The notes: generated by a model not told the origin, from the sequence alone. Positions 3,989-30,785 are shown, counted from the stretch's first letter. The stretch is 64,000 nt of DNA from IMGVR_UViG_3300013104_000001:223407-287406; one strand, 5' to 3'. A program made the numbers and translations.

Positions 3989-4028
3989 CGGCATAACGGG
4001 AGGGACTTCGGTCCCTCCCATTTATCGA
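3989..4028. terminator. Bidirectional hairpin terminator with CGGCATA on its left flank
   Basis: GGGAGGGAC-TTCG-GTCCCTCCC lies between convergent genes. Confidence 0.85.
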
Positions 4029-4403: not shown

Positions 4404-4436
4404 CATTGTGCAGTTAGGTTGATAAAAGGAACAGCA

Positions 4437-6536
4437 ATGAATCACATTACCGAAGCAAGTGAATTATCTCCCGATATCTTAGGCGGTATTCTTTGTTTGA
4501 ACCCTACCTTACATGGTGATAGCAGCCCACGATCTGCTATGTTTGGTGGTCACGCAGGACAAGCGGTTACCATTGAAGGTAGTACACCGCGAATGTTGAA
4601 GACCGGCATGGAGTACGTGTATGGTCGTCCAACATTTAAGATTGAAGCTCCGTGTCAGATGTTGGTCATTGGGGTTATCAATCGCTTTGCGACTAATCAC
4701 GTAGGTGCAGGCGGTATTCGTGAGAACCCCGAACGTTATGTGATCTATCAGAACGTAGAGCGCAGTAATGTCCCGACCTTTGGCATTATGTGTATTCCAA
4801 CTTACCATACGCGTAATCACGCATTAGGTTTTAAGTACAAGCCTCATGCGCGTAATATCCAGCGTCTGTATAATGAGAAAGAGTATTTCCAGAAAGGCGA
4901 TATCTTTGCAATCTCACCAAACTTAACGGAAGGTGGTGATTATAAGTACGGTCGTGAAACGAACGTTGCTTTCATGTCACTACCAGAGGTCGAGCAGGAC
5001 GGCATGGTGGTCACCGAATCGTTTGCCAAGGCGATGGCGTGTACCAAGATTGAAAACCGCATTGTACAATGGGGTGATGATTATGTGTTGTTGAACCTTT
5101 ATGGTGATGACACCACGTATAAAGCATATCCAGATATCGGTGAAAAGATTCGTGATGATGGCATGCTGTATGCCATGCGTCGAATCATACCGGGCACGGG
5201 TATTGTGAACATGACGCCAAAAGCATTGCGTATCTTCGATCCAGAGTTTGACAAACCTGTTTATGCAGAAGCAGGCGCTACCGTTATTAACGTAGCAGTG
5301 AACTCTGACCGTATGCGTACAGGTCGTGCTGAAGTTCAGTTCTATGATAAACAGACTGAACGCTATGAACGTGCTGCTCGTGAGTTCTCCAAACAACTGC
5401 GTAACCTGTATGACAATCTGTATCGTCAGTATGGTGCGGGTATGGTGCTGGAACCAGAACTCAACCGAATGATCACTGATGCGATCTCTGACACAGGTGG
5501 TATGGATCGTAAGATCAATAACCAAGGTCAGATCATGTCTGTCGATAAAGGTACCCAGGTTTATAACAAGGTACCGATTGGCGACTGGCGTGTGAAGATC
5601 ACCTTTGTTAAGCGTATCGAAGCCGGTGTACGTTTCAAGATCACTGATACCCATGGCGGTAAAGGTGTTATTGTAAATGTGATCAAGGATGAAGATGCAC
5701 CAACGGATGACTTCGGTAACCGTGCTGATGTAATCATGGATGATGTGTCGATCACCAAACGTATGAACTTAGGCAAACCAGTTGAGCAGTATATCAACGG
5801 GGCATCTGTCTATGCGACTAAGGTTGCGCGTGAGCTGGTTGCGAAGGGTGACACAGATGGTGCATGGAATCACCTGATGAGTTATTACGAAGCCGCAGCT
5901 TTTGAACAGTACGAGCTGATGCAGAATGGCATGTATAATGACAAGCCTACTCGTGACATGCATGTTGCTCATGTCTGTGCGAATGGCGTGCAGTTGTTTG
6001 CACCAACCAATCGTCGCTTCTATGGTGCTGAGCAATGTCGTCGTATCATGAAGAAGCATGACTTCCCGATCAGTCCAGTGCGGTATCGTGCACCTAATGG
6101 TGAAATGGTTCGTACGCGTGACCCGGTGATGATTGCACCAATCTACATCATCCTGCTGGAGAAGATGGGCGAGTATTGGGCGTCGTGTGCAATTCCAAAG
6201 CTCACGCACTTTGGTACACTCTCATCTCTGACGCAAGCAGACAAATACGCACTGCCATGGCGTAATACACCGACTCGTTTCGGTGAGTCTGAATTGCGAC
6301 TGTTCCTGGCGGCCTGTCGTGGTGTTTATGCTAACCGTCTACAGAGCATGGCGAACACGCCTGCAATGCAACGTGAAGCAGCATTGATGATGTTACGTCA
6401 TCAGACACCAATGAACATGGATAACGTGATTGACGAACGTAAAACACCATTGGGTCGTGCACGTCCGCTACAAATGTATAAGCACAACCAAAGCTGTCGT
6501 GGTATCGAGTTTGAAACCACTACACTTGCGAGCTAA
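4437..6536 (+). CDS. rpoB: Non-virion RNA polymerase beta-like subunit, C-terminal part (phiKZ gp71-73-like), uninterrupted
   Basis: Motifs include KITDTHGGKGVI (beta GDK..RHGxKG), KRMNLG and TRFGESE (QRFGEME). The ATG at 4437 follows an AAGGA RBS. Confidence 0.9.
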   Translation: MNHITEASELSPDILGGILCLNPTLHGDSSPRSAMFGGHAGQAVTIEGSTPRMLKTGMEYVYGRPTFKIEAPCQMLVIGVINRFATNHVGAGGIRENPERYVIYQNVERSNVPTFGIMCIPTYHTRNHALGFKYKPHARNIQRLYNEKEYFQKGDIFAISPNLTEGGDYKYGRETNVAFMSLPEVEQDGMVVTESFAKAMACTKIENRIVQWGDDYVLLNLYGDDTTYKAYPDIGEKIRDDGMLYAMRRIIPGTGIVNMTPKALRIFDPEFDKPVYAEAGATVINVAVNSDRMRTGRAEVQFYDKQTERYERAAREFSKQLRNLYDNLYRQYGAGMVLEPELNRMITDAISDTGGMDRKINNQGQIMSVDKGTQVYNKVPIGDWRVKITFVKRIEAGVRFKITDTHGGKGVIVNVIKDEDAPTDDFGNRADVIMDDVSITKRMNLGKPVEQYINGASVYATKVARELVAKGDTDGAWNHLMSYYEAAAFEQYELMQNGMYNDKPTRDMHVAHVCANGVQLFAPTNRRFYGAEQCRRIMKKHDFPISPVRYRAPNGEMVRTRDPVMIAPIYIILLEKMGEYWASCAIPKLTHFGTLSSLTQADKYALPWRNTPTRFGESELRLFLAACRGVYANRLQSMANTPAMQREAALMMLRHQTPMNMDNVIDERKTPLGRARPLQMYKHNQSCRGIEFETTTLAS

Positions 6537-21244: not shown

Positions 21245-22153
21245 ATGAGTCAAATTACCGATTTAACCGCAGAGGATCGTAAACTTACCCCACTCTCTGC
21301 CGATGATAGTCAACCTGACGTAGGTGACTTCAGTGATCTTAATGATTACCTCATGTCAGTGGTTGCCGACGTCCGTCGTGAAAAGATCATTGAGCTGTGC
21401 CAGAACTTAGCAGCATTGCAAAAGCATCAGGTCCAGCCCGACATCGACCGCCTGTTAATGATGGCAAACGATGGTGAAGCACCAGCTGTTCTCGATGACA
21501 TTACCCGGTTGTTATTTGAACACGCTTATGATCTGACAAAAGACATGGGGTTCAACTGGGCAGACGACATCGAGTTTGATCAGCTGTTCTTACTGGCGGA
21601 TATCATTGAAGGTGCTATGCTACTTGAAGGCATGGAAGACTACGGTGATATCTCCTCTATCCTTGATGGCGATGATTCTATCGAAGAGAAGGTTGTCGAT
21701 ATCTGGGGCTTTATCCTGGATAAAGATATGCATCATCTCTTTGATCAGATTGATTCAATTGAGGAAGCGACACTGGATGGTATCAATCGTGTGATTACCC
21801 GTCCATACGCACCGACCGCTTATGAAGATAACCAAGCACCACTGCCATTCGTGGTAGAACGCTTGATTGCTCATAAGGAAATCATGCGAAAAGATTCTAT
21901 CGCTTATGGGCATGTTTCCAATGGCGGGGCATTAGGCGTCACGTTAGACTCCTTAATCACGCTGTATACCACCGAACTGCAACAGGTTACTGATGTCAAA
22001 TCATTAGTCGATGAACTGGTCTATTTCACGTTGATCAGTGATACCCCTGATGGCTTGTGTAACTCGGCCGCTAAGAAACTCGCTGAAGCGTGGATTGATG
22101 ACATTCAACAGGTTAACGTTGTTGGCTCACAAATTGACAGGATGCTGCCATGA
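21245..22153 (+). CDS. Acidic helical protein (gp79 position)
   Basis: 302 aa with an AAGGA RBS. It overlaps the virion RNAP gene at ATGA. Confidence 0.75.
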   Translation: MSQITDLTAEDRKLTPLSADDSQPDVGDFSDLNDYLMSVVADVRREKIIELCQNLAALQKHQVQPDIDRLLMMANDGEAPAVLDDITRLLFEHAYDLTKDMGFNWADDIEFDQLFLLADIIEGAMLLEGMEDYGDISSILDGDDSIEEKVVDIWGFILDKDMHHLFDQIDSIEEATLDGINRVITRPYAPTAYEDNQAPLPFVVERLIAHKEIMRKDSIAYGHVSNGGALGVTLDSLITLYTTELQQVTDVKSLVDELVYFTLISDTPDGLCNSAAKKLAEAWIDDIQQVNVVGSQIDRMLP

Positions 22154-23460
22154 ATATCCGTGATTACTTACTACTGGCCTTTAAGAATAAAGCATATCGA
22201 CACCGTCAGTGGGTGCTGAGTGTCATGAGTATGGTCGGTACTCCTGATGGCGCAACACAGACCAGAGAGAATGTGCCTTATCAATGCCAACTAATCCGCA
22301 CCGGCGAAATCCTACAATGGTGCTACTGGGATGACTATGAAAAAACCTTTGTTCCAATCGACGACATCGATGTTAACTTCCCCGTCTTCAGACCAGAAGA
22401 CGAATTTATTATTAATGCTGGCGAGTTCCCTAATGTCAGTGAAACGCTTGTTACTACTTTCGGGCGTATTCTGGCTAACCATTATTATTTTGTCGATGTA
22501 CTTGACGATCGGGTTCCTTACCAGAACGTAGAGTTCAATCGCGGGATGCTGGAAAAGATCTTCAAAGCACGCGTGTTGGAAAACGATGAAGATCTGCGTC
22601 GCTCTGATAGAAGTTTTATCACTGTCGATGAGTTCAAGCGTTGCATCGATAATGGCTATGCATTAGGTGGCCTGTCGAAACTCTGTGTACCAACCGCTTG
22701 TCCTGAAACTATGTATCCGCCGAAGTTTATTATTGAGATGCGTGATCGCCTGTTTGCTGAGCACGCGGACGAACTCAATAACCCGGTAGTGATGGGTCGT
22801 ATTCAGGACCAGCTGTTAACCGAATACCGTAAGTTCTTAATGGCAACTCCGTCTGCGAAGTTCTTCGTTATTAAGAAGACCATCGACCAGGCATTCAACG
22901 CCATGTTCTTAACCGGTGGTATCGCAGGTGCATTCGGTGGCAACACGGTTATTACCAACTCGCTCTATGAAGGTTGGAACCTGAAGAACTTCCCGGCGCT
23001 GGTTAATGGATCTATCGAAGCTTCATTCGACCGCGGTGCTGCAACAGCTGATGGTGGCGAAAAGGTTAAGATCCTGATTCGTGCAACACAGAACATCAAT
23101 ATCACTCCTGATGACTGTGGTGTGAAGATCGGGGTTCCGTGGGAGATCCCAGAGTCGATGAAGACACGCTTCATTAACTCCTACATTTTCCAAGGTGACC
23201 AAACGGTATTGTTGACACCTGAGAACATCGATCAGTTTGTCGGTAAGCCGTTGATGGTGCGTTCTCCTGACTTCTGCCAACAGTCACATGGTGATACCTG
23301 TCAGTACTGTGCAGGTGCACACAACGCAACCAACACCCGCGGGATGTCATCCGGTACATCCAAGATCGGTTCTACCCTCATGCTGTTATCGATGAAGGCA
23401 ATGCATAAAGGTAGTAAGATCGATCTGATCAAATACGACCTCGATGAAGTCTTCAACTAA
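22150..23460 (+). CDS. rpoC: Virion RNA polymerase beta'-like subunit, C-terminal part (phiKZ gp80-like)
   Basis: Bridge-helix-like ASFDRGAATADGGEKVK, then DDCG, RSPDFC..TCQYCAG Zn site, and trigger-loop-like IGSTLMLLSMKAMH. Confidence 0.85.
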   Translation: MNIRDYLLLAFKNKAYRHRQWVLSVMSMVGTPDGATQTRENVPYQCQLIRTGEILQWCYWDDYEKTFVPIDDIDVNFPVFRPEDEFIINAGEFPNVSETLVTTFGRILANHYYFVDVLDDRVPYQNVEFNRGMLEKIFKARVLENDEDLRRSDRSFITVDEFKRCIDNGYALGGLSKLCVPTACPETMYPPKFIIEMRDRLFAEHADELNNPVVMGRIQDQLLTEYRKFLMATPSAKFFVIKKTIDQAFNAMFLTGGIAGAFGGNTVITNSLYEGWNLKNFPALVNGSIEASFDRGAATADGGEKVKILIRATQNINITPDDCGVKIGVPWEIPESMKTRFINSYIFQGDQTVLLTPENIDQFVGKPLMVRSPDFCQQSHGDTCQYCAGAHNATNTRGMSSGTSKIGSTLMLLSMKAMHKGSKIDLIKYDLDEVFN

Positions 23461-23473
23461 CTAAGCGCATACA

Positions 23474-23491
23474 TTTACAAACCTACATTAT
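23474..23491 (+). promoter_or_regulatory. Putative early promoter, TTTACAAACCTACATTAT
   Basis: A copy of the recurrent motif, heading the accessory island. Confidence 0.7.
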
Positions 23492-23530
23492 ACAGGGGAT
23501 AGTATAATCCCTAATTAATTGAGGTGTGTG

Positions 23531-24151
23531 ATGGACATTGTATTAAAAGCTGAGTTAGTGGCAGTGACTGCCCATGATGCGGTTGGACAGAAACGCAAGT
23601 TCACGGGTGAGCCGTATTGGACTCACCCGCAGAAGGTTGCCGACGTTGTTGCACAGCGCCAAGACGACCATATGTACTTTCAGTACTATGACTGGGACCT
23701 GGTAGCCGCAGCTTGGCTACATGACGTTGTTGAAGACACTCAGATATCCCAGGACTTTATCGTAAAACATTTTGGTCCTGATATTGCTCAGTTTGTTTTC
23801 GATGTGACTGAGCAGAACGTCTACGGTCCTAAATCTCAGAACGCATTACATGAGATCAATCGTTTAAGCAAAGTGTGTGATAAGAGTAAGTTCTTAAAGC
23901 TCTGCGACATCTATTGTAACGTGAGCGATATCTGCGTTGAGAGCGGCGAGCAGTTCATCGGCGCTTGGGTACCAACTAAGATCGCAACCGTATTGGCGAT
24001 TGGTAATGAGTCGCCAATGTTCCAAGGATTCGGGAAGGATATTCTGGATGTGATCGAAACAAAGATCAAGTCAGTCTATCCAACTCTCGATTACGGTAAG
24101 TTGTTCAAGGAAGCAATGAGCCGGTTAGAAAAAGCGAAAGGGCTTTCATAA
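23531..24151 (+). CDS. RelA/SpoT-type (Mesh1/small alarmone hydrolase-like) HD-domain hydrolase
   Basis: Motifs AH.GQKRK.TGEPY..HP, AAAWLHDVVEDT and LKLCDIYCN. GAGG RBS before the ATG at 23531. Confidence 0.85.
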   Translation: MDIVLKAELVAVTAHDAVGQKRKFTGEPYWTHPQKVADVVAQRQDDHMYFQYYDWDLVAAAWLHDVVEDTQISQDFIVKHFGPDIAQFVFDVTEQNVYGPKSQNALHEINRLSKVCDKSKFLKLCDIYCNVSDICVESGEQFIGAWVPTKIATVLAIGNESPMFQGFGKDILDVIETKIKSVYPTLDYGKLFKEAMSRLEKAKGLS

Positions 24152-24180
24152 GCAGTACCCTCTCTGTACCCGAGATATGA

Positions 24181-24378
24181 ATGACAACAAACCCGCAGTT
24201 TTCTTTTGCAGCTCAAATTGTTGAAGCCGCACACAGCTCAAGCAAACTGGAAATAGGACGTGAGACCGATACGCAAAAGAACCTGTTCGTTCTGCGTAAA
24301 GGTATTCCGTTCGACTTCTCGTTTATCATGTCTGAAGAAGCGATTTACCAACTTCGACAGGCAGGGCATATCAACTAA
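24181..24378 (+). CDS. Small hypothetical protein
   Basis: 65 aa ORF filling the gap in the operon. Confidence 0.55.
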   Translation: MTTNPQFSFAAQIVEAAHSSSKLEIGRETDTQKNLFVLRKGIPFDFSFIMSEEAIYQLRQAGHIN

Positions 24379-24393
24379 ACTGCTGAGGTAAGT

Positions 24394-24822
24394 ATGACTA
24401 ATAAATCGGAGATCTCACACGGTGGCGGCGATCAACCAGTCGACAAAGAGCAGAGTCATCTCTCTGTACTGGTGAATTACTCAACTGGCGTGATGGAAGG
24501 TGATCGTTTCAGTTACTCGGTAGCACTGGCCCTTGTTAAAGACGGGATCAAGGTCAAGCGTGAAGATTGGAATAATGCATTCCTTGTCTTCGTGCCGGGT
24601 ACGCAGAATGTAGAACTGCCCAAAGGGTCACCGTATGAAGTCGCACTCCACGGTAAGAAGACGGTTGCCAATATTCGTCCGCACATTGACCTGTACACGG
24701 AGTACGGTGAGTTCGAGGTCGGCTGGGTTCCTTCTCAGCAAGACCATCATGCACAAGACTGGATGATTGTGCTTGAACCCTCCGTCGATGAAAAAGACGA
24801 TAAAGAAAAAGATAAGCCATAA
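24394..24822 (+). CDS. tad2: Tad2-family (DUF2829) anti-Thoeris nucleotide-sponge protein
   Basis: FSYSVALALVKDGIKVKREDWN ... IDLYT..GEFEVGWVPSQQDHHAQDW matches the DUF2829 pattern F..AL..lK.G.kv.R.gWn ... GW.pSq.D.lA.DW. Confidence 0.8.
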   Translation: MTNKSEISHGGGDQPVDKEQSHLSVLVNYSTGVMEGDRFSYSVALALVKDGIKVKREDWNNAFLVFVPGTQNVELPKGSPYEVALHGKKTVANIRPHIDLYTEYGEFEVGWVPSQQDHHAQDWMIVLEPSVDEKDDKEKDKP

Positions 24823-24826
24823 TCCC

Positions 24827-24856
24827 AGGGTGTCCGAAAGGGCACCCTTTATGCCC
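24827..24856 (+). terminator. Hairpin followed by TTATGCCC
   Basis: AGGGTGTCC-GAAA-GGGCACCCT. Confidence 0.75.
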
Positions 24857-24871
24857 ATTAGGAGTTTTGCC

Positions 24872-25234
24872 ATGTCAGAGAACAAAGTAATTAATGTCGT
24901 ATTCGATACTCGCGAACAGGAAGAAGGTAAAGCCTGGTACTCATTAATCAATCAAGTCAATGCCGTATTGGCAAGCGGTGGTCAGTATCGTGATATCAGC
25001 ATCACACAGTGGGAAATGTACCGCGAAGGCGCAGTGTTCAAATCTGACAAGGGTGTCAACATCCCGTTCTATCGCCACTTCTATCATAACGCAGGGAACA
25101 ACACTCTGGGCGGTGGTTTCCTGCTGTTTGAAGTCATTGAAGATCTGGAGCGTTTTTACAATCCGCTGGCAACACCAGAAGAGGATCTGGATGATGTGCA
25201 TATGTCATTCACTGTCACAGTGACATTGGTCTAA
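24872..25234 (+). CDS. Hypothetical protein, ITxW paralog 1
   Basis: AGGAG RBS before the ATG at 24872. Shares motifs with the next two ORFs. Confidence 0.7.
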   Translation: MSENKVINVVFDTREQEEGKAWYSLINQVNAVLASGGQYRDISITQWEMYREGAVFKSDKGVNIPFYRHFYHNAGNNTLGGGFLLFEVIEDLERFYNPLATPEEDLDDVHMSFTVTVTLV

Positions 25235-25244
25235 GAGGCACGTG

Positions 25245-25601
25245 ATGGAAAAAGCATTTGAAGTCACCTTTGACTCCCGTTCTCCAGCAGATGCGGGCTA
25301 TCTGTTAAAACAGCGCTTGACCAACTTCACTCACAGTGGTCGGTTGATGCGTGACGCTGCTATTACCAAATGGCAACTCTTCTCAGATGAGAAACCGATC
25401 GCAGGTGATGACGATGTACACATCTCTATCCTGCAGCACTTCACCTATGACGTTCAGTCAGGCACGGTGAGCTGTGATGTTAATACCCAGTCGGCATTGC
25501 GTGACATCTATCGTTGTTACGGCCCTGACTCCCCATTACCCCCTATCAGTAAAATACCAGGTGCGATTGACCTGGTTGTAACTATTGTTATCTTCTATTA
25601 A
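25245..25601 (+). CDS. Hypothetical protein, ITxW paralog 2
   Basis: GAGG RBS. Pattern V.FD.R...ITKW...V.I...HF...V(T/I)V at the C-terminus. Confidence 0.7.
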   Translation: MEKAFEVTFDSRSPADAGYLLKQRLTNFTHSGRLMRDAAITKWQLFSDEKPIAGDDDVHISILQHFTYDVQSGTVSCDVNTQSALRDIYRCYGPDSPLPPISKIPGAIDLVVTIVIFY

Positions 25602-25618
25602 CTACAGGTGATTTTATC

Positions 25619-26035
25619 ATGTCGATCAAAGCTAAAGATTTCCGTCTGCCATTACGTTCTAAGAATGGTGCGTTCTCCCTGGATGTTGAACTCAATCACA
25701 AACACTGGGACCGTGATGTCGCGGATCTGCACGTTGACGTTGCAAACATCGTTAGCTGCAAGCGTCACATTGAAAAGATCGTGATTACCAAATGGGTGTG
25801 CTATGACGAAGAAGGTATTCGTCGCGGTAGTAATAAAAACATCTCTTTGAATATCACCGAGTGGTTCATGAGTCTGAAAGGTCCGATCAATAACGACAAG
25901 ATCAAGCCGATCAGCTTCGCCCATGCAATTAACCAGCTGCCATCGGTACGCACTCCCTGGGTCAAAGATGTTCGCATGGATGTTGAGCTGACCATCCACT
26001 ACAGTGTTAACCCCGCTCAAGACTCACGTCATTAA
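25619..26035 (+). CDS. Hypothetical protein, ITxW paralog 3 (more divergent)
   Basis: AGGTG RBS. Contains VITKWVCYDEEG and a C-terminal strand MDVELTIHY. Confidence 0.7.
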   Translation: MSIKAKDFRLPLRSKNGAFSLDVELNHKHWDRDVADLHVDVANIVSCKRHIEKIVITKWVCYDEEGIRRGSNKNISLNITEWFMSLKGPINNDKIKPISFAHAINQLPSVRTPWVKDVRMDVELTIHYSVNPAQDSRH

Positions 26036-26160
26036 TTAACGTTAAGATATAATCGGCATATATCTTGTCTCGTTAGCGTAAGCTCGCTAAAAACTCTTTT
26101 AAAGTTTTGTATAACAAACTATCAACTTTGTAGAAAGATACTAAAAGGAAATTAACCAAC

Positions 26161-26874
26161 ATGTTACATGAAAACTTCGAAGCCCTGGTAGCGAACATCA
26201 GTGCTCAGATCAACCTCCTATTACCGGAAGAACTCCCTACCCTGATACTTACTAACAGCGGGCTTTATATTGACGATAAGCGCGTTGAACGCACAGGGAT
26301 GTTGTTGAGTTTGTTGACCCCTCAACCAGGGCATACTTTCGACGTGACCTTTGATAAAGAACTGCAGGATGCGTTTGCTCACAACAACCTGGAATTTATC
26401 AAAGTAGGTGAGGGGATTGCCTACGGCCTTCTGCGAAAAAGTACTGTGAATAATGATCCAGCGGTGTTCTGGATTCAAGTGACTAATGACGCAGACGTGC
26501 CACACGTGGTAGAGCAAGCCCGTTCGATTATCAGTGATCTTAAAAAGAATGCAGGTTATCCGCAGGCGTACAACGTAGACCAGCTTGATATAGACTGGAA
26601 TGCCATGAATTGGAGACAGTTGCTGGCGTTGTTAATAGATCGTGTTGACCCAGACCACCGTTTCCGCTTGGCTGGTAATGAACAGTATGACTTTGTTTTA
26701 TCAAGCAACGCGATTAAGTACTATCGCGAGACAACCAGTAAACACCCTATGTCTCCAGTCGCTTATCTGAATGGTGTCAATCTGTTCAGTGCCAATGACT
26801 TTAATGAGTCTCTTATCCATTGGTCTATTGCGCCGTCAGGTAGCAATCGTCCGGTTGTGGAGGCATCTGTTTAA
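26161..26874 (+). CDS. Hypothetical protein
   Basis: 237 aa with an AAGGA RBS. Confidence 0.75.
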   Translation: MLHENFEALVANISAQINLLLPEELPTLILTNSGLYIDDKRVERTGMLLSLLTPQPGHTFDVTFDKELQDAFAHNNLEFIKVGEGIAYGLLRKSTVNNDPAVFWIQVTNDADVPHVVEQARSIISDLKKNAGYPQAYNVDQLDIDWNAMNWRQLLALLIDRVDPDHRFRLAGNEQYDFVLSSNAIKYYRETTSKHPMSPVAYLNGVNLFSANDFNESLIHWSIAPSGSNRPVVEASV

Positions 26875-26929
26875 TTCGACACACGATCTAGATGTTATAC
26901 ACGTAATGTAACGTCTGGAGTTTTCGTAG

Positions 26930-27205
26930 GTGACTATCCCGCAATTACCCGATGAAGAAGGCGTTGATGCTGACTTCCAATCCCTGCAAGCTCGTCACGC
27001 TGCAATGTTGATGAGCTTTCTTGATTTAACTGCCCGCCTTGATAAAGAGGAGGTGTCGATCACTGACATCAGTGATTTCTCCGTAGGTATGTCTAACATT
27101 ATCTGCGACCACATGCGTACTGATCCTAAACGCGATAGTTACAGGAGCACTATGGTTGAGAAACTCGAACAGGTTCTGTCTCGACACCTGCTCAAAAAGG
27201 GGTAA
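26930..27205 (+). CDS. Hypothetical protein
   Basis: 91 aa with a GGAG RBS and a GTG start. Confidence 0.6.
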   Translation: MTIPQLPDEEGVDADFQSLQARHAAMLMSFLDLTARLDKEEVSITDISDFSVGMSNIICDHMRTDPKRDSYRSTMVEKLEQVLSRHLLKKG

Positions 27206-27245
27206 GTGACGGAACACCCTAGTCTGTGATGAAAAGGAAAGCAAA

Positions 27246-28025
27246 ATGATTTTCGAAAAAGAAGGGGATACGTTGCACATCGTGCGACTGAGGACAAAGC
27301 CCTGGTTTCACATGACCGTGACCAGCGACCCGGATGCAAGTATGGAGATTGTTAATACCAATCTGCGACAAGGGACGTTTACGGATCCACATTTCCAACA
27401 CCAGTACGATATTGCTAAAAAGGAGATGGGCAATGACCCTGATCCACATGATGTTGTCTTTCATCAGTTTTTAACTACTGATAGTCAAAACGGGTACCAA
27501 TCAGGCCATTGGCTCATTCGTGACCATATTGCCAAAGGTTTCTCGTTAAAGCATATTACCAATATAGGCGATTGGTGGTCAACACAAGCGTACTTCTATG
27601 GTGCCGAGGATACTCCTGATCCTGACGATGCCAATAAGAAATACAAAGTGACCGATCTTGGCAAATACTTCTTTGATTCAGGTCTTTATGAATTGGGTAA
27701 GTTCCCGATGTATTTCCTGCCAGGCGAAGACGGGGCGGATACTTACGACGAACTCATTGAGACTCATCGTTTACCCCAACCCTCATTCGGTTACTCCTGT
27801 GTTGCCATTAAAAGTGGAATGGCGTTTAGTTTATTAACGTATAACAATTCAAAGCGTGCTCTTTCGGAAGATGAAAACCTTAAGGCGTGCCAGATACCAG
27901 TTAAGGCGAATGGGTTGTTATACAGTTCGGTGATGGAATTAGCAATGGCCAAGAACACTCCAGTTTGGTTTGTCCTGGAGATGCTCGAAACCGCGACTGA
28001 TCCCGAATGGCATTTTGTTAATTGA
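27246..28025 (+). CDS. Hypothetical protein
   Basis: 259 aa with an AAGGA RBS. Confidence 0.75.
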   Translation: MIFEKEGDTLHIVRLRTKPWFHMTVTSDPDASMEIVNTNLRQGTFTDPHFQHQYDIAKKEMGNDPDPHDVVFHQFLTTDSQNGYQSGHWLIRDHIAKGFSLKHITNIGDWWSTQAYFYGAEDTPDPDDANKKYKVTDLGKYFFDSGLYELGKFPMYFLPGEDGADTYDELIETHRLPQPSFGYSCVAIKSGMAFSLLTYNNSKRALSEDENLKACQIPVKANGLLYSSVMELAMAKNTPVWFVLEMLETATDPEWHFVN

Positions 28026-28036
28026 CCGTTGTGGGG

Positions 28037-28045
28037 AATCCTATG
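28037..28045 (+). promoter_or_regulatory. Putative late promoter, AATCCTATG
   Basis: An identical 9-mer occurs at 33711 ahead of the head-protein operon. phiKZ late promoters have a TATG core. Confidence 0.5.
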
Positions 28046-28101
28046 CAATTGCAAAGTGATGTACCTACAACCACTCGTAAAATGATTTAAGGAGAGATTA
28101 A

Positions 28102-29688
28102 ATGAGTGAAGATAAAAACGTAGTAGAGACGCACGGTGATCTGCCAAAGAACGCCGAAGTCGGCGAACGCTTCACCGTTAAAGAAGATGCGATCGTTTAC
28201 GAGTACCAAAAGGACGGTACCTGGAAAGACGTAGACATCGATGAAGTTATCGATGCTGAAAACGACCAGGCGCAGACTTCCGATGACCAGGTACACTCTG
28301 CCGATGACAATCAACAGACCGCGGATCATAACGAGTCTGGTGCAAGCGATAATGCACAGCAGGGACCGGCAAGCGATACGCCGGCTGATGAAGACAATAC
28401 TAAGGTTGACCAGCAGAACACTGCCAACGGTGGCGAACGCCCAATCGATGTGCAGAACCAAACTGACAACCAGAACCCGTCGACTGATTCTGCCAAAGCT
28501 GTAGAAACGGCAGAACAGCAGGAAGAAGCCAAACAGGCCGATCCTGATCAGGAACTGCCATCTGATGATGAGCAGCGTAATCTGGAAAGTGGCGAAACTA
28601 CTCCGCGCCAGGAATCAGCCGTTAATGAAGTTTCTGACGAGAAACAACAAGATGGCGTAGTTCCTCCAACTGCACCTGCAGCTCCGCCGGTCGAAGATCG
28701 TCCACGTGCTGAAGTCAATCCAGAAGCGCCACAGTCTACTCCTGAGGCAAAGCCGGATGAAGTTAAAGTTGCAGCTGCACAGCAGCAAGCGCTGAACGAA
28801 GACAAAGCCCGTGATCAGATCGATGAAGCCGGTGCCGATGCCACTGCTGCAACCACTGCAGAACCAACCCCGGCCGGTGAGCAGAAAGCCGAAGCTGAAG
28901 CGCAGCAACAAGCTGCTGCTGATGATGCGGACAAACCTGCAGAAGCGACTGAAACCCAGCATCCAAACTCGGGTGTAGCGGATGATGTCAATATCGGTAA
29001 ACCACGTAATGATCAAACCTACATCGGTGATCAGAACGCGGCTAACACACCGTCACCTGCCACCGTGCAACATCAAGAGAACCATACTGCCGAAGAGAAC
29101 CCGGTGGTTAGTCAGGAAGAGACTGCGGTACAAAACGCAACTGATCCTGATGCACCAACGATCATCCCGGCAGAAGCGACCTCTGAGTCAATGAACCATT
29201 CGCCAGCTAATCCTACTCAGGAAACTGTGTATGTGAAGCAGGACGAAAACGTTGATCCAGAAGTGAAAGTCATCCGTCAGCGTATTGAAGAATACATTGC
29301 ACAGATGGGTCGTAATGGATCTCACCGTCGCGATGAAGGGCCAAAGCATCAGGCGCGTCTGTATAAGACACTGCATGCTATCATGGCGCTTGAACCGATC
29401 AAGTTCAAACAAGCGATGGACTACCTGCTGGATCGTGTGTATGAAGAACGTGCTGGTGCATTCTCTGATGTGTACGTGCGCCGTTACTTCGACATGCTGT
29501 CACCACAGCATCTGCAGGGTAACCAGGTGAAAGAGTTTGACAATATCCTGTCACTCGTCGCCAATGTTGGTTACTCGAAGAACCGCAGTCGTGCTCTGCA
29601 GGATATCGATCTGCAGCGTGCTCTGAAGAACATTCAGGATGCGGGTAAGCAACAGCGTATGGCAGCGTACTTCTCTGCTCTGCGTTAA
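28102..29688 (+). CDS. Protein with a ~330-aa acidic disordered region and a helical C-terminal domain
   Basis: 528 aa with an AAGGAG RBS. The middle is D/E/Q/A/P-rich and the last ~145 aa look folded. Confidence 0.8.
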   Translation: MSEDKNVVETHGDLPKNAEVGERFTVKEDAIVYEYQKDGTWKDVDIDEVIDAENDQAQTSDDQVHSADDNQQTADHNESGASDNAQQGPASDTPADEDNTKVDQQNTANGGERPIDVQNQTDNQNPSTDSAKAVETAEQQEEAKQADPDQELPSDDEQRNLESGETTPRQESAVNEVSDEKQQDGVVPPTAPAAPPVEDRPRAEVNPEAPQSTPEAKPDEVKVAAAQQQALNEDKARDQIDEAGADATAATTAEPTPAGEQKAEAEAQQQAAADDADKPAEATETQHPNSGVADDVNIGKPRNDQTYIGDQNAANTPSPATVQHQENHTAEENPVVSQEETAVQNATDPDAPTIIPAEATSESMNHSPANPTQETVYVKQDENVDPEVKVIRQRIEEYIAQMGRNGSHRRDEGPKHQARLYKTLHAIMALEPIKFKQAMDYLLDRVYEERAGAFSDVYVRRYFDMLSPQHLQGNQVKEFDNILSLVANVGYSKNRSRALQDIDLQRALKNIQDAGKQQRMAAYFSALR

Positions 29689-29701: not shown

Positions 29702-29740
29702 CAGCATAGGGAGAGGGCAAACGCCCTCTCCTTTATGCCG
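29702..29740. terminator. Bidirectional terminator, CAGCATA-hairpin-TTATGCCG
   Basis: GGGAGAGGGC-AAAC-GCCCTCTCCT between convergent genes. Confidence 0.85.
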
Positions 29741-29759
29741 TCTATTCTTTTTTTTTTGT

Positions 29760-30263
29760 TTAAACTAAGCTACCATTGAACGCGACAACATCATTTCCAA
29801 TAAATGGATTATATCTCACCATCGAACCTAGCGTGTAATCGTAATAGATGAAGTCAATGCACTGGGCGCCATTGTAAGTAGTGTATGCTTTTGATGTGAA
29901 CCCATTACGGTTTAATGCAATGTAAGACGGTCGACTACTTATCGCAGTAAACCTCAGCAGGACCTGTTTTTGGTTGGTAGTGTTATCGTTAAACACGGGT
30001 AATGATGGATGCGCGTGTCTAGCGATAGTACACATCCATGAATCCCAAGTGAACCACTCTTTGTACGGAGTACCGTACATATTGTTGGATGCATCTAAAG
30101 TAGTATTGACATACGTACCTGCATACTTCTGCATTGCAGTTCTGCCGTCCGCTACCTTCGTGTATTTAGCCGCATTGTTATTGAGCCATGTCAAGAATTC
30201 GGCATAGCTCATCTTAGCCCCAATGCTGGGTTGATGTTTACCACCGATCAACATTTCTAACAT
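29760..30263 (-). CDS. LCCL-like domain protein (MLEML family), paralog B
   Basis: MYGT....FTWDSWMCTIARHA ... SYIALNRNGFTS fits the LCCL pattern vyGt..Yt.dS.iC.AAvH ... Y.gs.rNGi.S. Confidence 0.65.
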   Translation of the reverse strand: MLEMLIGGKHQPSIGAKMSYAEFLTWLNNNAAKYTKVADGRTAMQKYAGTYVNTTLDASNNMYGTPYKEWFTWDSWMCTIARHAHPSLPVFNDNTTNQKQVLLRFTAISSRPSYIALNRNGFTSKAYTTYNGAQCIDFIYYDYTLGSMVRYNPFIGNDVVAFNGSLV

Positions 30264-30275
30264 GATTATTTTCCC

Positions 30276-30785
30276 TTAAACAAGCGTACCATCAAATACA
30301 ACCGGAGTACTTGCAATGGACGGATTCCAACGCATCATGATACCTGTGGCATTATCATGATAGATAAAGTCAATTAACTGTCGACCGCCGAATGTAGAAT
30401 ATGAAATACTGTTATATCCATTTCGGTTGATGCCAAGGAAAGATGGGCGAGAAATATACGTCCCAAGTTTTATTAAGCAAAACTGTTTATTAGCCAGCAT
30501 GTAATCGAAGACTGATTGAATAGGGCAAGAGTGTCTAATAAACCTGGCGAAAGGTGAGTCGTGTGTAAACCAGTTGTTATACGGAGTACCCCACATGTTC
30601 CCGCCATCAGCAGTCATCGCTATACTGACATACGCATTCTGGTAATTAGATGAAGACGTGGTGATGGCAGGACTCGTTGTCAAAGCAGTGTATTTAGCTT
30701 TGTTATTGTTAAGCCAAATAACGAAATCAGAGTACGACATCCCCGTAACTTTCTTCTTACCTCCTGCCAATAACATTTCTAACAT
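30276..30785 (-). CDS. LCCL-like domain protein (MLEML family), paralog A
   Basis: MWGTPYNNWFTHDSPFARFIRHS ... SFLGINRNGYNS. An obvious full-length paralog of 29760-30263. Confidence 0.65.
   Translation of the reverse strand: MLEMLLAGGKKKVTGMSYSDFVIWLNNNKAKYTALTTSPAITTSSSNYQNAYVSIAMTADGGNMWGTPYNNWFTHDSPFARFIRHSCPIQSVFDYMLANKQFCLIKLGTYISRPSFLGINRNGYNSISYSTFGGRQLIDFIYHDNATGIMMRWNPSIASTPVVFDGTLV

What the first reader, a model, noticed from the sequence alone, without database searches (positions are those of the whole stretch)
23474..28025. Early anti-defence island: alarmone-type HD hydrolase, Tad2 sponge and unknown genes
Seen: directly after the virion RNAP gene, an early-type promoter heads an inserted run of nine genes. 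The first has SpoT/Mesh1 HD motifs (GEPY..HP, LHDVVEDT). The third has the DUF2829 signature. Established: Tad2 proteins sequester Thoeris gcADPR signals, and some also bind CBASS cyclic dinucleotides. Small alarmone hydrolases degrade (p)ppGpp/(p)ppApp and neutralise some toxSAS toxins. The phage nucleus blocks DNA-targeting defences but not nucleotide-signal abortive infection. Inference: this is an island against nucleotide second-messenger immunity, and the co-located unknowns (24181, 24872-26035, 26161, 26930, 27246) are candidates for new anti-defence proteins.
Basis: partly seen in the sequence, partly recalled or inferred. Interest (0 to 1): 0.72.

Follow-up and report, generated by a model that had tools for sequence, protein, structure and literature searches.

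The report
Early accessory operon with alarmone hydrolase, Tad2
Just after a virion RNA-polymerase gene, a nucleus-forming jumbo phage related to Erwinia phage RAY carries a predicted early operon whose first three genes include an alarmone-type hydrolase and a Tad2-like signal sponge; these two are likely counter-defence genes of known kinds, and the other genes have no known function.

Summary
The sequence facts hold. Nine + strand genes follow the vRNAP beta-prime gene. Gene 1 is a RelA/SpoT-type HD hydrolase (Pfam HD_4, E 5e-11) with every catalytic residue kept. Gene 3 is a Tad2/DUF2829 protein (E 1e-13) that keeps most gcADPR-contact residues and is predicted to self-assemble. A 38-nt motif at 23467-23504 matches about 25 intergenic copies in the genome, all on the + strand, one of them upstream of chimallin. 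It is very probably the phage's early promoter.

"Inserted" is wrong. Genes 2-10 are syntenic in Erwinia Agricanvirus phages. The locus is a variable region between conserved anchors (beta-prime on one side, g9/g10 on the other). In RAY the HD gene was replaced by a g9 paralog, leaving a 60-nt remnant of the HD gene.

A conserved terminator-like hairpin follows the Tad2 gene and another follows g10. Only HD-g2-Tad2 is clearly promoter-proximal.

Among the unknowns, g4-g6 are a clade-restricted paralog family. g5 gives a confident model with no known structural relative. g9 ends in an I-TevI-like helix-turn-helix. The RAY ortholog of g10 is abundant in lysates.

Anti-defence is plausible for two genes and only guilt by association for the rest. 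Verdict: new members of known kinds.

The parts
22150..23460 (+). vRNAP beta-prime subunit gene (left anchor, context)
   Evidence: phrog_2962 RNA polymerase beta subunit, E 4e-152. 77% aa identity to RAY gp270, which is vRNAP beta-prime subunit 2 (PMC10299810).
23467..23504 (+). Predicted early (vRNAP) promoter; core CCTACATTAT at 23482-23491
   Evidence: Leave-one-out PWM 29.6 bits, rank 21 of 574,738, 0 in shuffles. About 25 copies, all + strand, intergenic, 13-80 nt upstream of start codons. The same motif lies upstream of chimallin and of an RNAP beta gene. The core is conserved at the same spot in RAY, L006 and L007.
23531..24151 (+). g1: single-domain RelA/SpoT-type HD hydrolase (small alarmone hydrolase-like), 206 aa
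   Evidence: PF13328 5.4e-11. TIGR00691 5.9e-16. PDB matches Lmo0812, Mesh1 and Rel hydrolase domains. R22 H32 H64 D65 E68 D69 D126 N130 are invariant in four chimallivirus homologs.
24181..24378 (+). g2: 65-aa protein of unknown function
   Evidence: phrog_11788 4.5e-38. 80% identical to RAY gp272. No Pfam, NCBIfam or PADLOC hit.
24394..24822 (+). g3: Tad2-like (DUF2829) protein, 142 aa; core residues 37-126 with a 36-aa N-terminal extension and a charged tail
   Evidence: PF11195 1.1e-13. ModTad2, SptTad2 and SPO1 Tad2 structures at E 3e-5 to 3e-3. W59 N60 W111 S114 D117 align with gcADPR contact residues. Four-copy model scores 0.86 against a best control of 0.01. RAY ortholog gp273 was detected by MS (PMC6690015).
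24827..24856 (+). Hairpin (dG -17.1) followed by TTATGCC: terminator-like unit boundary
   Evidence: The same element sits after the Tad2 ortholog in RAY (L005:12903). The family has about 50 intergenic copies, many of them with no nearby downstream gene on the same strand, including between convergent genes.
24872..25234 (+). g4: paralog family member (phrog_6658), 120 aa
   Evidence: Homologs in L007 and pEa_SNUABM_37 are directly preceded by the early motif.
25242..25601 (+). g5: paralog of g4, 119 aa; confident model with no known structural relative
   Evidence: AF2 pLDDT 87.8, pTM 0.80. No match in PDB or AFDB clusters. An exhaustive profile search found only 3 full-length representative clusters.
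25619..26035 (+). g6: 138 aa, basic; probable third member of the g4/g5 fold family
   Evidence: phrog_11644. The g5 model matches a 130-aa RAY protein (the length of gp276, the g6 ortholog) at TM 0.69/0.64, E 1.6e-3. hhalign pairs the shared IT-x-W motif, E 0.008 but probability only 4.9%.
26161..26874 (+). g7: 237 aa, unknown
   Evidence: phrog_11471 1.8e-108. Six homolog clusters, all from the same phage clade. The Atlas search gave no lead.
26930..27205 (+). g8: 91 aa, unknown (GTG start)
   Evidence: phrog_11459 1.1e-24. 54% identical to RAY gp279.
27246..28025 (+). g9: 259 aa, conserved right-hand anchor; C-terminal I-TevI-like helix-turn-helix
   Evidence: Orthologs in RAY, L006, L007 and pEa_SNUABM_37. 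Only the C-terminal 205-259 is modelled confidently. Best PDB match is the I-TevI DNA-binding domain 1t2t_A, Z 5.3, rmsd 1.3 over 43 aa. Weak Pfam I-TevI_DNA-bd hits in relatives. Paralog of RAY gp271.
28102..29688 (+). g10: 528-aa acidic low-complexity protein with a conserved C-terminal ~140-aa domain
   Evidence: phrog_11399 4e-157. The C-terminal domain is conserved in L003, L006 and L007. RAY ortholog gp281 ranked sixth in lysate MS (PMC6690015).
29708..29760 (+). Hairpin (dG -20.6) + TTATGCCG + T-run: terminator-like end of the + strand unit
   Evidence: Conserved in RAY (L005:18128). Minus-strand genes converge from 29760.

Best explanation
The locus is a promoter-defined accessory operon of an Agricanvirus-like, chimallin-encoding jumbo phage. 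A copy of the phage's early promoter motif sits immediately after the vRNAP beta-prime stop codon. This is inferred from the motif class, which is shared with the chimallin gene. It drives a first unit, HD-g2-Tad2-like, which is closed by a conserved hairpin-TTATGCC element. In that unit, g1 is a catalytically intact, single-domain RelA/SpoT-type Mn-dependent 3'-pyrophosphohydrolase (shown by homology and residues). It most likely removes 3'-pyrophosphate from (p)ppGpp, (p)ppApp or pyrophosphorylated tRNA (inferred). That would blunt toxSAS/CapRel-type abortive infection, the stringent response, or both. g3 is a Tad2-family protein that probably forms the Tad2 tetramer and sequesters a TIR-derived ADP-ribose-type signal (inferred from conserved pocket residues). 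That would block Thoeris-type immunity, against which the phage nucleus gives no protection. The second unit, g4-g10, consists of clade-restricted proteins with no assignable function. It holds a tandem paralog family (g4-g6), an I-TevI-like helix-turn-helix protein (g9) and an abundant acidic protein (g10). It is expressed by read-through or from unrecognised promoters. Across relatives the stretch between beta-prime and g9/g10 turns over, and the promoter-proximal slot was swapped in the RAY lineage from the HD gene to a g9 paralog.
For: Homology and catalytic residues of g1. Stand-alone phage small alarmone hydrolases neutralise every toxSAS tested (PMC7229694), and one is used to detoxify CapRel during overexpression (PMC9712102). 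Homology, pocket residues and predicted self-assembly of g3. The RAY ortholog of g3 is made. Promoter motif statistics, its presence upstream of chimallin and its conservation in relatives. Published statement that such motifs mark early vRNAP promoters in RNAP-encoding jumbo phages: PMC7598289. Unit boundaries. Variable content and the swap remnant. Precedent for a Thoeris sponge in a nucleus-forming phage, phiKZ Tad1 gp184.
Against: There are no expression data for this phage. The only RNA-library hits are short contigs of a 92-95% identical relative, and these may be DNA carry-over. No biochemical data exist for any of these proteins. Substrate and ligand cannot be read from sequence. Tad2 homologs differ in ligand (gcADPR, His-ADPR, N7-cADPR, cCMP/cUMP, cGG). 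Two pocket positions differ here (WNN for WNG, Q116 for T). HD homologs occur in 317 phage records of many types, which fits a general physiological role as well as a counter-defence one. The self-assembly score may reflect memory of solved Tad2 tetramers. Whether the hosts carry Thoeris or toxSAS systems was not examined.
Confidence: 0.55

Rival explanations
1. Host-takeover operon rather than counter-defence. The hydrolase keeps (p)ppGpp low so that the infected cell stays in a high-translation state. The DUF2829 protein binds a housekeeping nucleotide signal such as c-di-GMP, or has an unrelated role.
For: HD_4 homologs are widespread in large virulent phages of unrelated hosts, including phiKZ gp246 and 201phi2-1. 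This points to a general function. One Tad2 homolog binds c-di-GMP with picomolar affinity.
Against: The HD gene was dispensable enough to be lost in the whole RAY group. The locus is variable between relatives, as expected for arms-race cargo. The gcADPR pocket residues, not the dinucleotide insertion, are what g3 retains.
Confidence: 0.25
2. One reading: all nine genes form one coherent island against nucleotide second-messenger immunity, and the seven unknowns are new anti-defence proteins.
For: Co-location behind one early promoter. Variable content between relatives. g4/g5 homologs have their own early motif in two relatives. The tandem paralog expansion and the lack of any known structural relative for g5 are typical of fast-evolving phage-host interface genes.
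Against: A terminator-like element separates Tad2 from g4-g10. g9 and the g10 C-terminal domain are conserved anchors, not variable cargo. g9 looks DNA-binding. The g10 ortholog is one of the most abundant lysate proteins, which is atypical for a small inhibitor. No anti-defence or defence model hits any of them.
Confidence: 0.12
3. Homology without the inferred function. g1 is a generic HD phosphohydrolase of nucleotide metabolism, and g3 is a DUF2829 domain used for something other than signal sequestration.
For: Pfam HD_4 aligns only to profile positions 5-78 of 156. The C-terminal third of g1 has no annotated match. g3 carries a conserved 36-aa N-terminal extension and a charged tail that are absent from characterised Tad2 proteins.
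Against: The best matches are specifically RelA/SpoT hydrolase domains. The R, H, HD, ED, D and N positions characteristic of that family are all present. PDB alignments extend to residue ~134 and include the distal Asp and Asn. The Tad2 pocket tryptophans and the S/D motif are conserved.
Confidence: 0.08

Closest known systems
Stand-alone phage small alarmone hydrolases (PaSpo of Salmonella phage SSU5, PbcSpo of PVP-SE1) and Mesh1/Lmo0812-type SAHs
   Same: Single HD_4 domain of about 200 aa with no synthetase domain. Full set of RelA/SpoT hydrolase catalytic residues. Phage-encoded.
   Different: Subfamily not assigned. Only 28-51% identical even to other chimallivirus homologs. Has an 8-aa insertion between the HP and HD motifs. 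Substrate untested. Sits at the promoter-proximal position of an early operon in a nucleus-forming phage.
Tad2 (DUF2829) Thoeris sponges: SPO1 Tad2 (8SME), ModTad2 (9EIB), SptTad2 (8WJD), HgmTad2/AcrIIA7 (8KBI)
   Same: Pfam Tad2-like domain over its full length. Conserved W-N and W-x-P-S-x-x-D pocket motifs. Short SPO1-type core. Predicted homo-oligomer.
   Different: 142 aa rather than about 90-100. Conserved disordered N-terminal extension and K/D/E-rich tail. WNN instead of WNG, and Q instead of T in the ribose-contact motif. Lacks the long insertion that makes the cyclic-dinucleotide pocket. Ligand unknown.
phiKZ Tad1 (gp184)
   Same: A signal sponge against TIR-based immunity, encoded in the non-essential accessory region of a nucleus-forming jumbo phage.
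   Different: A different, unrelated protein family (Tad1, not Tad2) at a different genomic location.
I-TevI-type homing endonucleases (for g9 and RAY gp271)
   Same: Similar length. C-terminal strand-strand-helix-turn-helix that superposes on the I-TevI DNA-binding domain. Weak Pfam I-TevI_DNA-bd hits in paralogs. A paralog replaced a neighbouring gene.
   Different: No GIY-YIG Pfam match at E below 5 in any of 13 members. The N-terminal 200 aa are modelled poorly. No evidence of nuclease activity or mobility.

Membership tests
RelA/SpoT-superfamily small alarmone hydrolase (SAH) | HD_4 (PF13328) domain above the curated threshold | tested here: met
   42.9 bits against a cutoff of 27.2, E 5.4e-11. 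TIGR00691 N-terminal region 5.9e-16.
RelA/SpoT-superfamily small alarmone hydrolase (SAH) | Metal ligands H...HD...D, plus the ED diad, the conserved Arg and the distal Asn | tested here: met
   H32, H64-D65, D126, E68-D69, R22 and N130 align to Mesh1, Lmo0812 and Rel. They are invariant in four chimallivirus homologs.
RelA/SpoT-superfamily small alarmone hydrolase (SAH) | Single domain with no synthetase domain | tested here: met
   206 aa. The only Pfam hit is HD_4.
RelA/SpoT-superfamily small alarmone hydrolase (SAH) | Mn-dependent hydrolysis of (p)ppGpp, (p)ppApp or 3'-pyrophosphorylated tRNA; neutralisation of toxSAS toxicity | not testable with these tools
   Needs enzyme assays and toxicity-rescue assays.
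RelA/SpoT-superfamily small alarmone hydrolase (SAH) | Assignment to a named SAH subfamily (PaSpo, PbcSpo, Mesh1 and others) | not tested
   The subfamily HMMs of PMC7229694 were not available.
Tad2 (DUF2829) immune-signal sponge | Tad2-like domain (PF11195) above threshold, and similarity to solved Tad2 proteins | tested here: met
   51.9 bits against a cutoff of 25, profile positions 2-73 of 73. ModTad2 3e-5, SptTad2 4e-5, SPO1 Tad2 2e-3.
Tad2 (DUF2829) immune-signal sponge | gcADPR pocket residues (SPO1 W25, W73; HgmTad2 W21 N22 G23, W87 L88 S90 T92 D93) | tested here: inconclusive
   W59, N60, W111, V112, S114 and D117 are conserved. N61 replaces G and Q116 replaces T (alignments; residue roles).
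Tad2 (DUF2829) immune-signal sponge | Homotetramer whose interfaces form the pockets | tested here: inconclusive
   Four copies of residues 34-130 score 0.86 against a best control of 0.01. The mark was reached by 21 of 30 solved homo-pairs and 0 of 23 single chains. This is a prediction only and may reflect solved Tad2 tetramers.
Tad2 (DUF2829) immune-signal sponge | Long beta2-beta5 insertion that forms the cyclic-dinucleotide pocket (HgmTad2/SptTad2 subtype) | tested here: not met
   The core is 90 aa and aligns without the insertion. There are gaps against SptTad2 and only a partial match to HgmTad2.
Tad2 (DUF2829) immune-signal sponge | Binding of a TIR-derived signal and inhibition of Thoeris | not testable with these tools
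   Needs binding assays and plaque assays.
Phage anti-defence island / accessory locus | Early expression | tested here: inconclusive
   A strong early-motif copy precedes g1, of the same class as the one upstream of chimallin. There are no transcript data. A terminator-like element follows g3.
Phage anti-defence island / accessory locus | Gene content varies between related phages at a fixed position | tested here: met
   Between beta-prime and g9/g10 the genes differ in RAY, L006, L007 and pEa_SNUABM_37.
Phage anti-defence island / accessory locus | The unknown members inhibit defence systems | not testable with these tools
   No homology to any known anti-defence or defence family.
GIY-YIG / I-TevI-type homing endonuclease (g9) | C-terminal I-TevI-type helix-turn-helix DNA-binding domain | tested here: inconclusive
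   1t2t_A Z 5.3, rmsd 1.3 over 43 aa, which is below the noise level quoted for the tool. Pfam I-TevI_DNA-bd 3.8e-4 in the L006 paralog and 0.059 in one family member, both under threshold.
GIY-YIG / I-TevI-type homing endonuclease (g9) | GIY-YIG catalytic domain | tested here: not met
   No PF01541 hit at E up to 5 in 13 family members. The N-terminal model is of low confidence.

The most novel reading that the evidence does not exclude
The tandem g4-g5-g6 family is a new family of early-expressed inhibitors or sponges used by nucleus-forming phages against cytoplasmic immunity. RAY probably has a fourth copy, gp277. g5 gives a confident model with no relative in PDB or AFDB clusters. The family is restricted to this phage clade, and its homologs carry their own early promoter motif in two distant relatives. 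A separate point is that the promoter-proximal slot after the vRNAP gene acts as an exchange site, where an I-TevI-like gene displaced the alarmone hydrolase.
Probability: 0.2. Interest if true: 0.7.

Novelty: new member of a known kind. Interest (0 to 1): 0.45.

Why it matters
Nucleus-forming jumbo phages shield their DNA from nucleases. They remain exposed to abortive-infection systems that act through small molecules or on translation. So far only Tad1 of phiKZ is a documented answer to that exposure. This locus gives concrete, cheap-to-test candidates in the Erwinia/Pantoea jumbo-phage group: an intact alarmone-type hydrolase and a divergent, extended Tad2. It also gives a defined early promoter motif and a terminator-like element that can be used to annotate temporal classes across the genome. 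The HD-to-g9-paralog swap, with its remnant, shows how such slots turn over. The g4-g6 fold family is a reasonable place to look for new inhibitors.

Tried and rejected
- Sigma-70 promoter reading of 23474-23503: 9 of 12 matches, and the number of such sites in the region equals the shuffle expectation. Rejected in favour of the phage-specific motif.
- PADLOC scan of all ten proteins: no hit.
- ESM Atlas searches for g9, g7 and the g10 C-terminus: scores at chance level or no model.
- AF2 model of g9: mean pLDDT 50, usable only for residues 205-259.
- Fold searches with the confident g5 model in PDB (Foldseek and VIA-align), AFDB clusters and ESM Atlas: nothing above noise. Best was Z 5.3 / TM 0.56 to the hydantoinase/acetone-carboxylase C-terminal domain.
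- Exhaustive profile search for the g4/g5 family: three full-length relatives, plus spurious multi-stretch hits in very long proteins.
- hhalign of g4/g5 against g6: E 0.008 but probability 4.9%. Not accepted alone.
- RNA evidence: two 2026 RNA runs with the same organism label held no reads. A leaf-litter metatranscriptome gave three contigs of 150-285 nt from a 92-95% identical relative over the HD 3' end, g2 and Tad2. That run was found with these genes as bait and may contain DNA, so timing stays inferred.
- Rfam and tRNA scans of the region: nothing.
- Not attempted: presence of Thoeris or toxSAS systems in candidate host genomes; SAH subfamily assignment.

Full report
**What the genome is.** The window is the last 64 kb of a 287,406-bp contig. 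Its DNA is about 80% identical over parts of this region to Erwinia Agricanvirus phages such as RAY, Ea35-70 and Special G. The genome encodes a chimallin ("nuclear shell protein", phrog_4795, E 2e-207). It is therefore a member of the nucleus-forming Chimalliviridae, as RAY is (PMC10299810).

**Gene map.** The + strand carries, in order:
- gm1 (21245-22153)
- g0 (22150-23460)
- g1 (23531-24151; the ATG start is supported by a GAGGTG ribosome-binding site and by alignment to homologs)
- g2 (24181-24378)
- g3 (24394-24822)
- g4 (24872-25234)
- g5 (25242-25601)
- g6 (25619-26035)
- g7 (26161-26874)
- g8 (26930-27205)
- g9 (27246-28025)
- g10 (28102-29688)

g0 is 77% identical to RAY gp270. RAY gp270 is vRNAP beta-prime subunit 2.

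**The two annotated genes.**

*g1.*
- It matches Pfam HD_4 at E 5.4e-11, above the gathering score.
- It matches the N-terminal hydrolase part of TIGR00691 spoT_relA at 5.9e-16.
- It matches the solved structures Lmo0812, Drosophila and human Mesh1, and Rel hydrolase domains at 1e-9 to 1e-6.
- In these alignments R22, H32, H64-D65, E68-D69, D126 and N130 fall on the Arg, metal-binding His/His-Asp/Asp, Glu-Asp diad and Asn of the RelA/SpoT hydrolase site.
- All eight residues are invariant in the homologs from L006, pEa_SNUABM_37 and phiKZ gp246.
- It is a 206-aa single-domain protein, so by sequence it is a small alarmone hydrolase.

*g3.*
- It matches Pfam Tad2-like (PF11195) over the whole profile at 1.1e-13.
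- It matches the solved ModTad2, SptTad2 and SPO1 Tad2 proteins.
- W59-N60 and W111-V-P-S114-Q-Q116-D117 align with the residues that contact gcADPR in SPO1 Tad2 (W25, W73) and in HgmTad2 (W21 N22 G23; W87 L88 S90 T92 D93).
- Two pocket positions differ: N61 for G and Q116 for T.
- The core is of the short SPO1 type. It lacks the insertion that builds the cyclic-dinucleotide pocket.
- Four copies of residues 34-130 are predicted to assemble: score 0.86, best control 0.01. The mark was reached by 21 of 30 solved homo-pairs and 0 of 23 single chains. This is a prediction that may lean on solved Tad2 tetramers.
- The 36-residue N-terminal extension is conserved in RAY (81% identity over residues 1-141), so it is translated.
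- RAY gp273, the ortholog, was detected by mass spectrometry of lysates (PMC6690015).

**The promoter.**
- K-mer enrichment in intergenic DNA of the whole genome gave CCTACATTAC.
- About 25 copies share a longer consensus, CnAnAnnATnTCAnnCCTACATTACnnAnGTGnT.
- All copies are on the + strand and intergenic, 13-80 nt upstream of start codons.
- The copy at 23467-23504 scores 29.6 bits with a PWM built without it. It ranks 21 of 574,738 positions, and no shuffled genome reached that score.
- Other copies precede the chimallin gene and an RNAP beta subunit gene.
- The literature states that RNAP-encoding jumbo phages have such a bioinformatically detectable, roughly 10-nt AT-rich motif at about -10 of early genes, recognised by the virion RNAP (PMC7598289).
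- The core is perfectly conserved at the same place in RAY, right after the gp270 stop. The motif also follows the beta-prime gene in the more distant L006 and L007.
- "Early-type promoter" is therefore well supported in silico, but not by transcripts.

**Unit boundaries.**
- A second enriched element is a GC-rich hairpin followed by TTATGCC(G), with about 50 intergenic copies.
- Many copies have no downstream gene on the same strand for kilobases, and some hairpins sit between convergent genes and carry TTATGC on both sides. The simplest reading is a terminator.
- One strong copy (dG -17.1) lies at 24827-24856, five bases after the g3 stop. The next on this strand (dG -20.6, followed by a T-run) lies at 29708-29760, after g10.
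- Both positions are conserved in RAY.
- The run therefore consists of unit A (g1-g2-g3) and unit B (g4-g10).
- How unit B is expressed is unknown. It could be read-through, or a middle or late promoter, and those classes cannot be predicted for these phages.
- Homologs of g4/g5 in L007 and pEa_SNUABM_37 are directly preceded by the early motif.

**Not an insertion, but a variable slot.**
- RAY and Special G have orthologs of g2-g10 in the same order, with 40-81% aa identity, plus one extra gene, gp277.
- They lack the HD gene. In its place sits gp271, a 238-aa paralog of g9 (phrog_6749).
- DNA homology between the window and RAY runs through the beta-prime 3' end and the promoter core, then breaks. 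It resumes inside the last 60 nt of the HD reading frame.
- In RAY that stretch is non-coding and carries a premature stop. The HD gene is therefore ancestral and was replaced in the RAY lineage.
- More distant relatives keep beta-prime, g9 and the g10 C-terminal domain as anchors. They differ in between:
  - L006 has a g9 paralog and an HD gene (50% identical).
  - pEa_SNUABM_37 has a g4/5 homolog and an HD gene (41% identical).
  - L007 has a g4/5 homolog and neither an HD nor a Tad2 gene.
- Tad2 is confined to the Agricanvirus group and this genome among jumbo phages of this clade.

**The unknowns.**
- *g4 and g5* are paralogs (25% identity, both phrog_6658). An exhaustive profile search of 1.8 billion representatives found only three further full-length clusters.
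- *The g5 model* is confident (pLDDT 87.8, pTM 0.80). It has no significant match in PDB, AFDB clusters or the ESM Atlas.
- *In BFVD* the g5 model matches its RAY orthologs. It also matches, at 10-17% identity, a 130-aa RAY protein (the length of gp276, the g6 ortholog; TM 0.69) and a 114-aa Simmy50 protein (the length of gp277; TM 0.58). g4-g6, and gp277 in RAY, are therefore probably one tandemly expanded fold family. The sequence-level support for g6 is weak.
- *g9* models poorly except for residues 205-259. That segment superposes on the I-TevI DNA-binding helix-turn-helix (Z 5.3, rmsd 1.3 over 43 aa). Sub-threshold Pfam I-TevI_DNA-bd hits in paralogs and the Atlas structural neighbours point the same way. 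No GIY-YIG domain is detected.
- *g10* is an acidic, low-complexity protein with a conserved C-terminal domain. Its RAY ortholog gp281 ranked sixth in lysate mass spectrometry.
- *g2, g7 and g8* gave no lead.

**Interpretation.**
- The best-supported reading is that unit A is an early module that quenches nucleotide-based host responses.
- Stand-alone phage small alarmone hydrolases neutralise all tested toxSAS toxins, and this has been proposed as a phage counter-measure (PMC7229694). One is used to detoxify CapRel (PMC9712102).
- Tad2 proteins sequester TIR-derived signals, with ligand range varying between homologs.
- A nucleus-forming phage is known to carry a Thoeris sponge (phiKZ Tad1).
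- What g1 hydrolyses and what g3 binds is inference.
- A stringent-response or host-takeover role for g1 is a serious rival, because homologs occur in 317 phage records of many kinds.
- For g2 and g4-g9 the anti-defence idea rests on position only. For g9 and g10 it is weakened by their conservation and features.

**Novelty and score.** Both annotated proteins are new, divergent members of known families in a phage group where they have not been studied. The operon architecture, the swap with its remnant and the g4-g6 fold family are useful details rather than new principles. Interest 0.45.

Noticed in passing
genome-wide; window copies at 3996 (-), 15255 (+), 24850 (+), 29733 (+), 30879 (-), 38308 (-), 53752 (+): A GC-rich hairpin followed by the conserved word TTATGCC(G) occurs about 50 times in intergenic DNA. 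It often sits just upstream of an early-promoter motif. Sometimes one hairpin carries TTATGC on both sides between convergent genes. It is probably the phage's terminator. The conserved TATG resembles the phiKZ late-promoter initiator, so a dual role is possible.
   Followed up: partly
window 4395, 15743 (weak), 23483, 63399; about 21 further copies elsewhere in the genome: Copies of the early-promoter motif, all on the + strand. One lies 80 nt upstream of the chimallin gene (genome 205807) and one upstream of an RNAP beta gene (window 4419-6536).
   Followed up: partly
RAY locus L005:11325-12210 versus window 23461-24151: In RAY-type phages the HD gene is replaced by gp271, a paralog of g9. 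The last ~60 nt of the HD reading frame survive as non-coding DNA with a premature stop.
   Followed up: yes
window 27246-28025 (g9), residues 10-26: The family consensus LHxVRFR...YMTTTDD resembles a degenerate GIY...YIG pair, and the protein has roughly the length and C-terminal domain of I-TevI. This is my reading only. Pfam GIY-YIG does not hit and the N-terminal model is poor.
   Followed up: partly
window 28102-29688 (g10): About 380 residues of D/E/Q/A/P-rich low-complexity sequence cause an AT skew of 0.30 at 28001-29000. They precede a conserved ~140-aa C-terminal domain. The RAY ortholog is among the most abundant lysate proteins. Function unknown.
   Followed up: partly
window 29760-30263 (-) and 30276-30785 (-): Two tandem paralogous genes (167 and 169 aa, both starting MLEML) converge on the operon. 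They correspond in position and length to RAY gp282 and gp283.
   Followed up: no
window 24042-24816: A leaf-litter metatranscriptome run (X39) holds three short contigs, 92-95% identical, over the HD 3' end, g2 and the Tad2-like gene. This shows that a close relative occurs in that habitat. It does not prove transcription.
   Followed up: partly
window 26887-26919: A 13-bp imperfect inverted repeat in the g7-g8 gap contains the reverse complement of the TTACATTAC promoter core. It does not score as a promoter on either strand.
   Followed up: no
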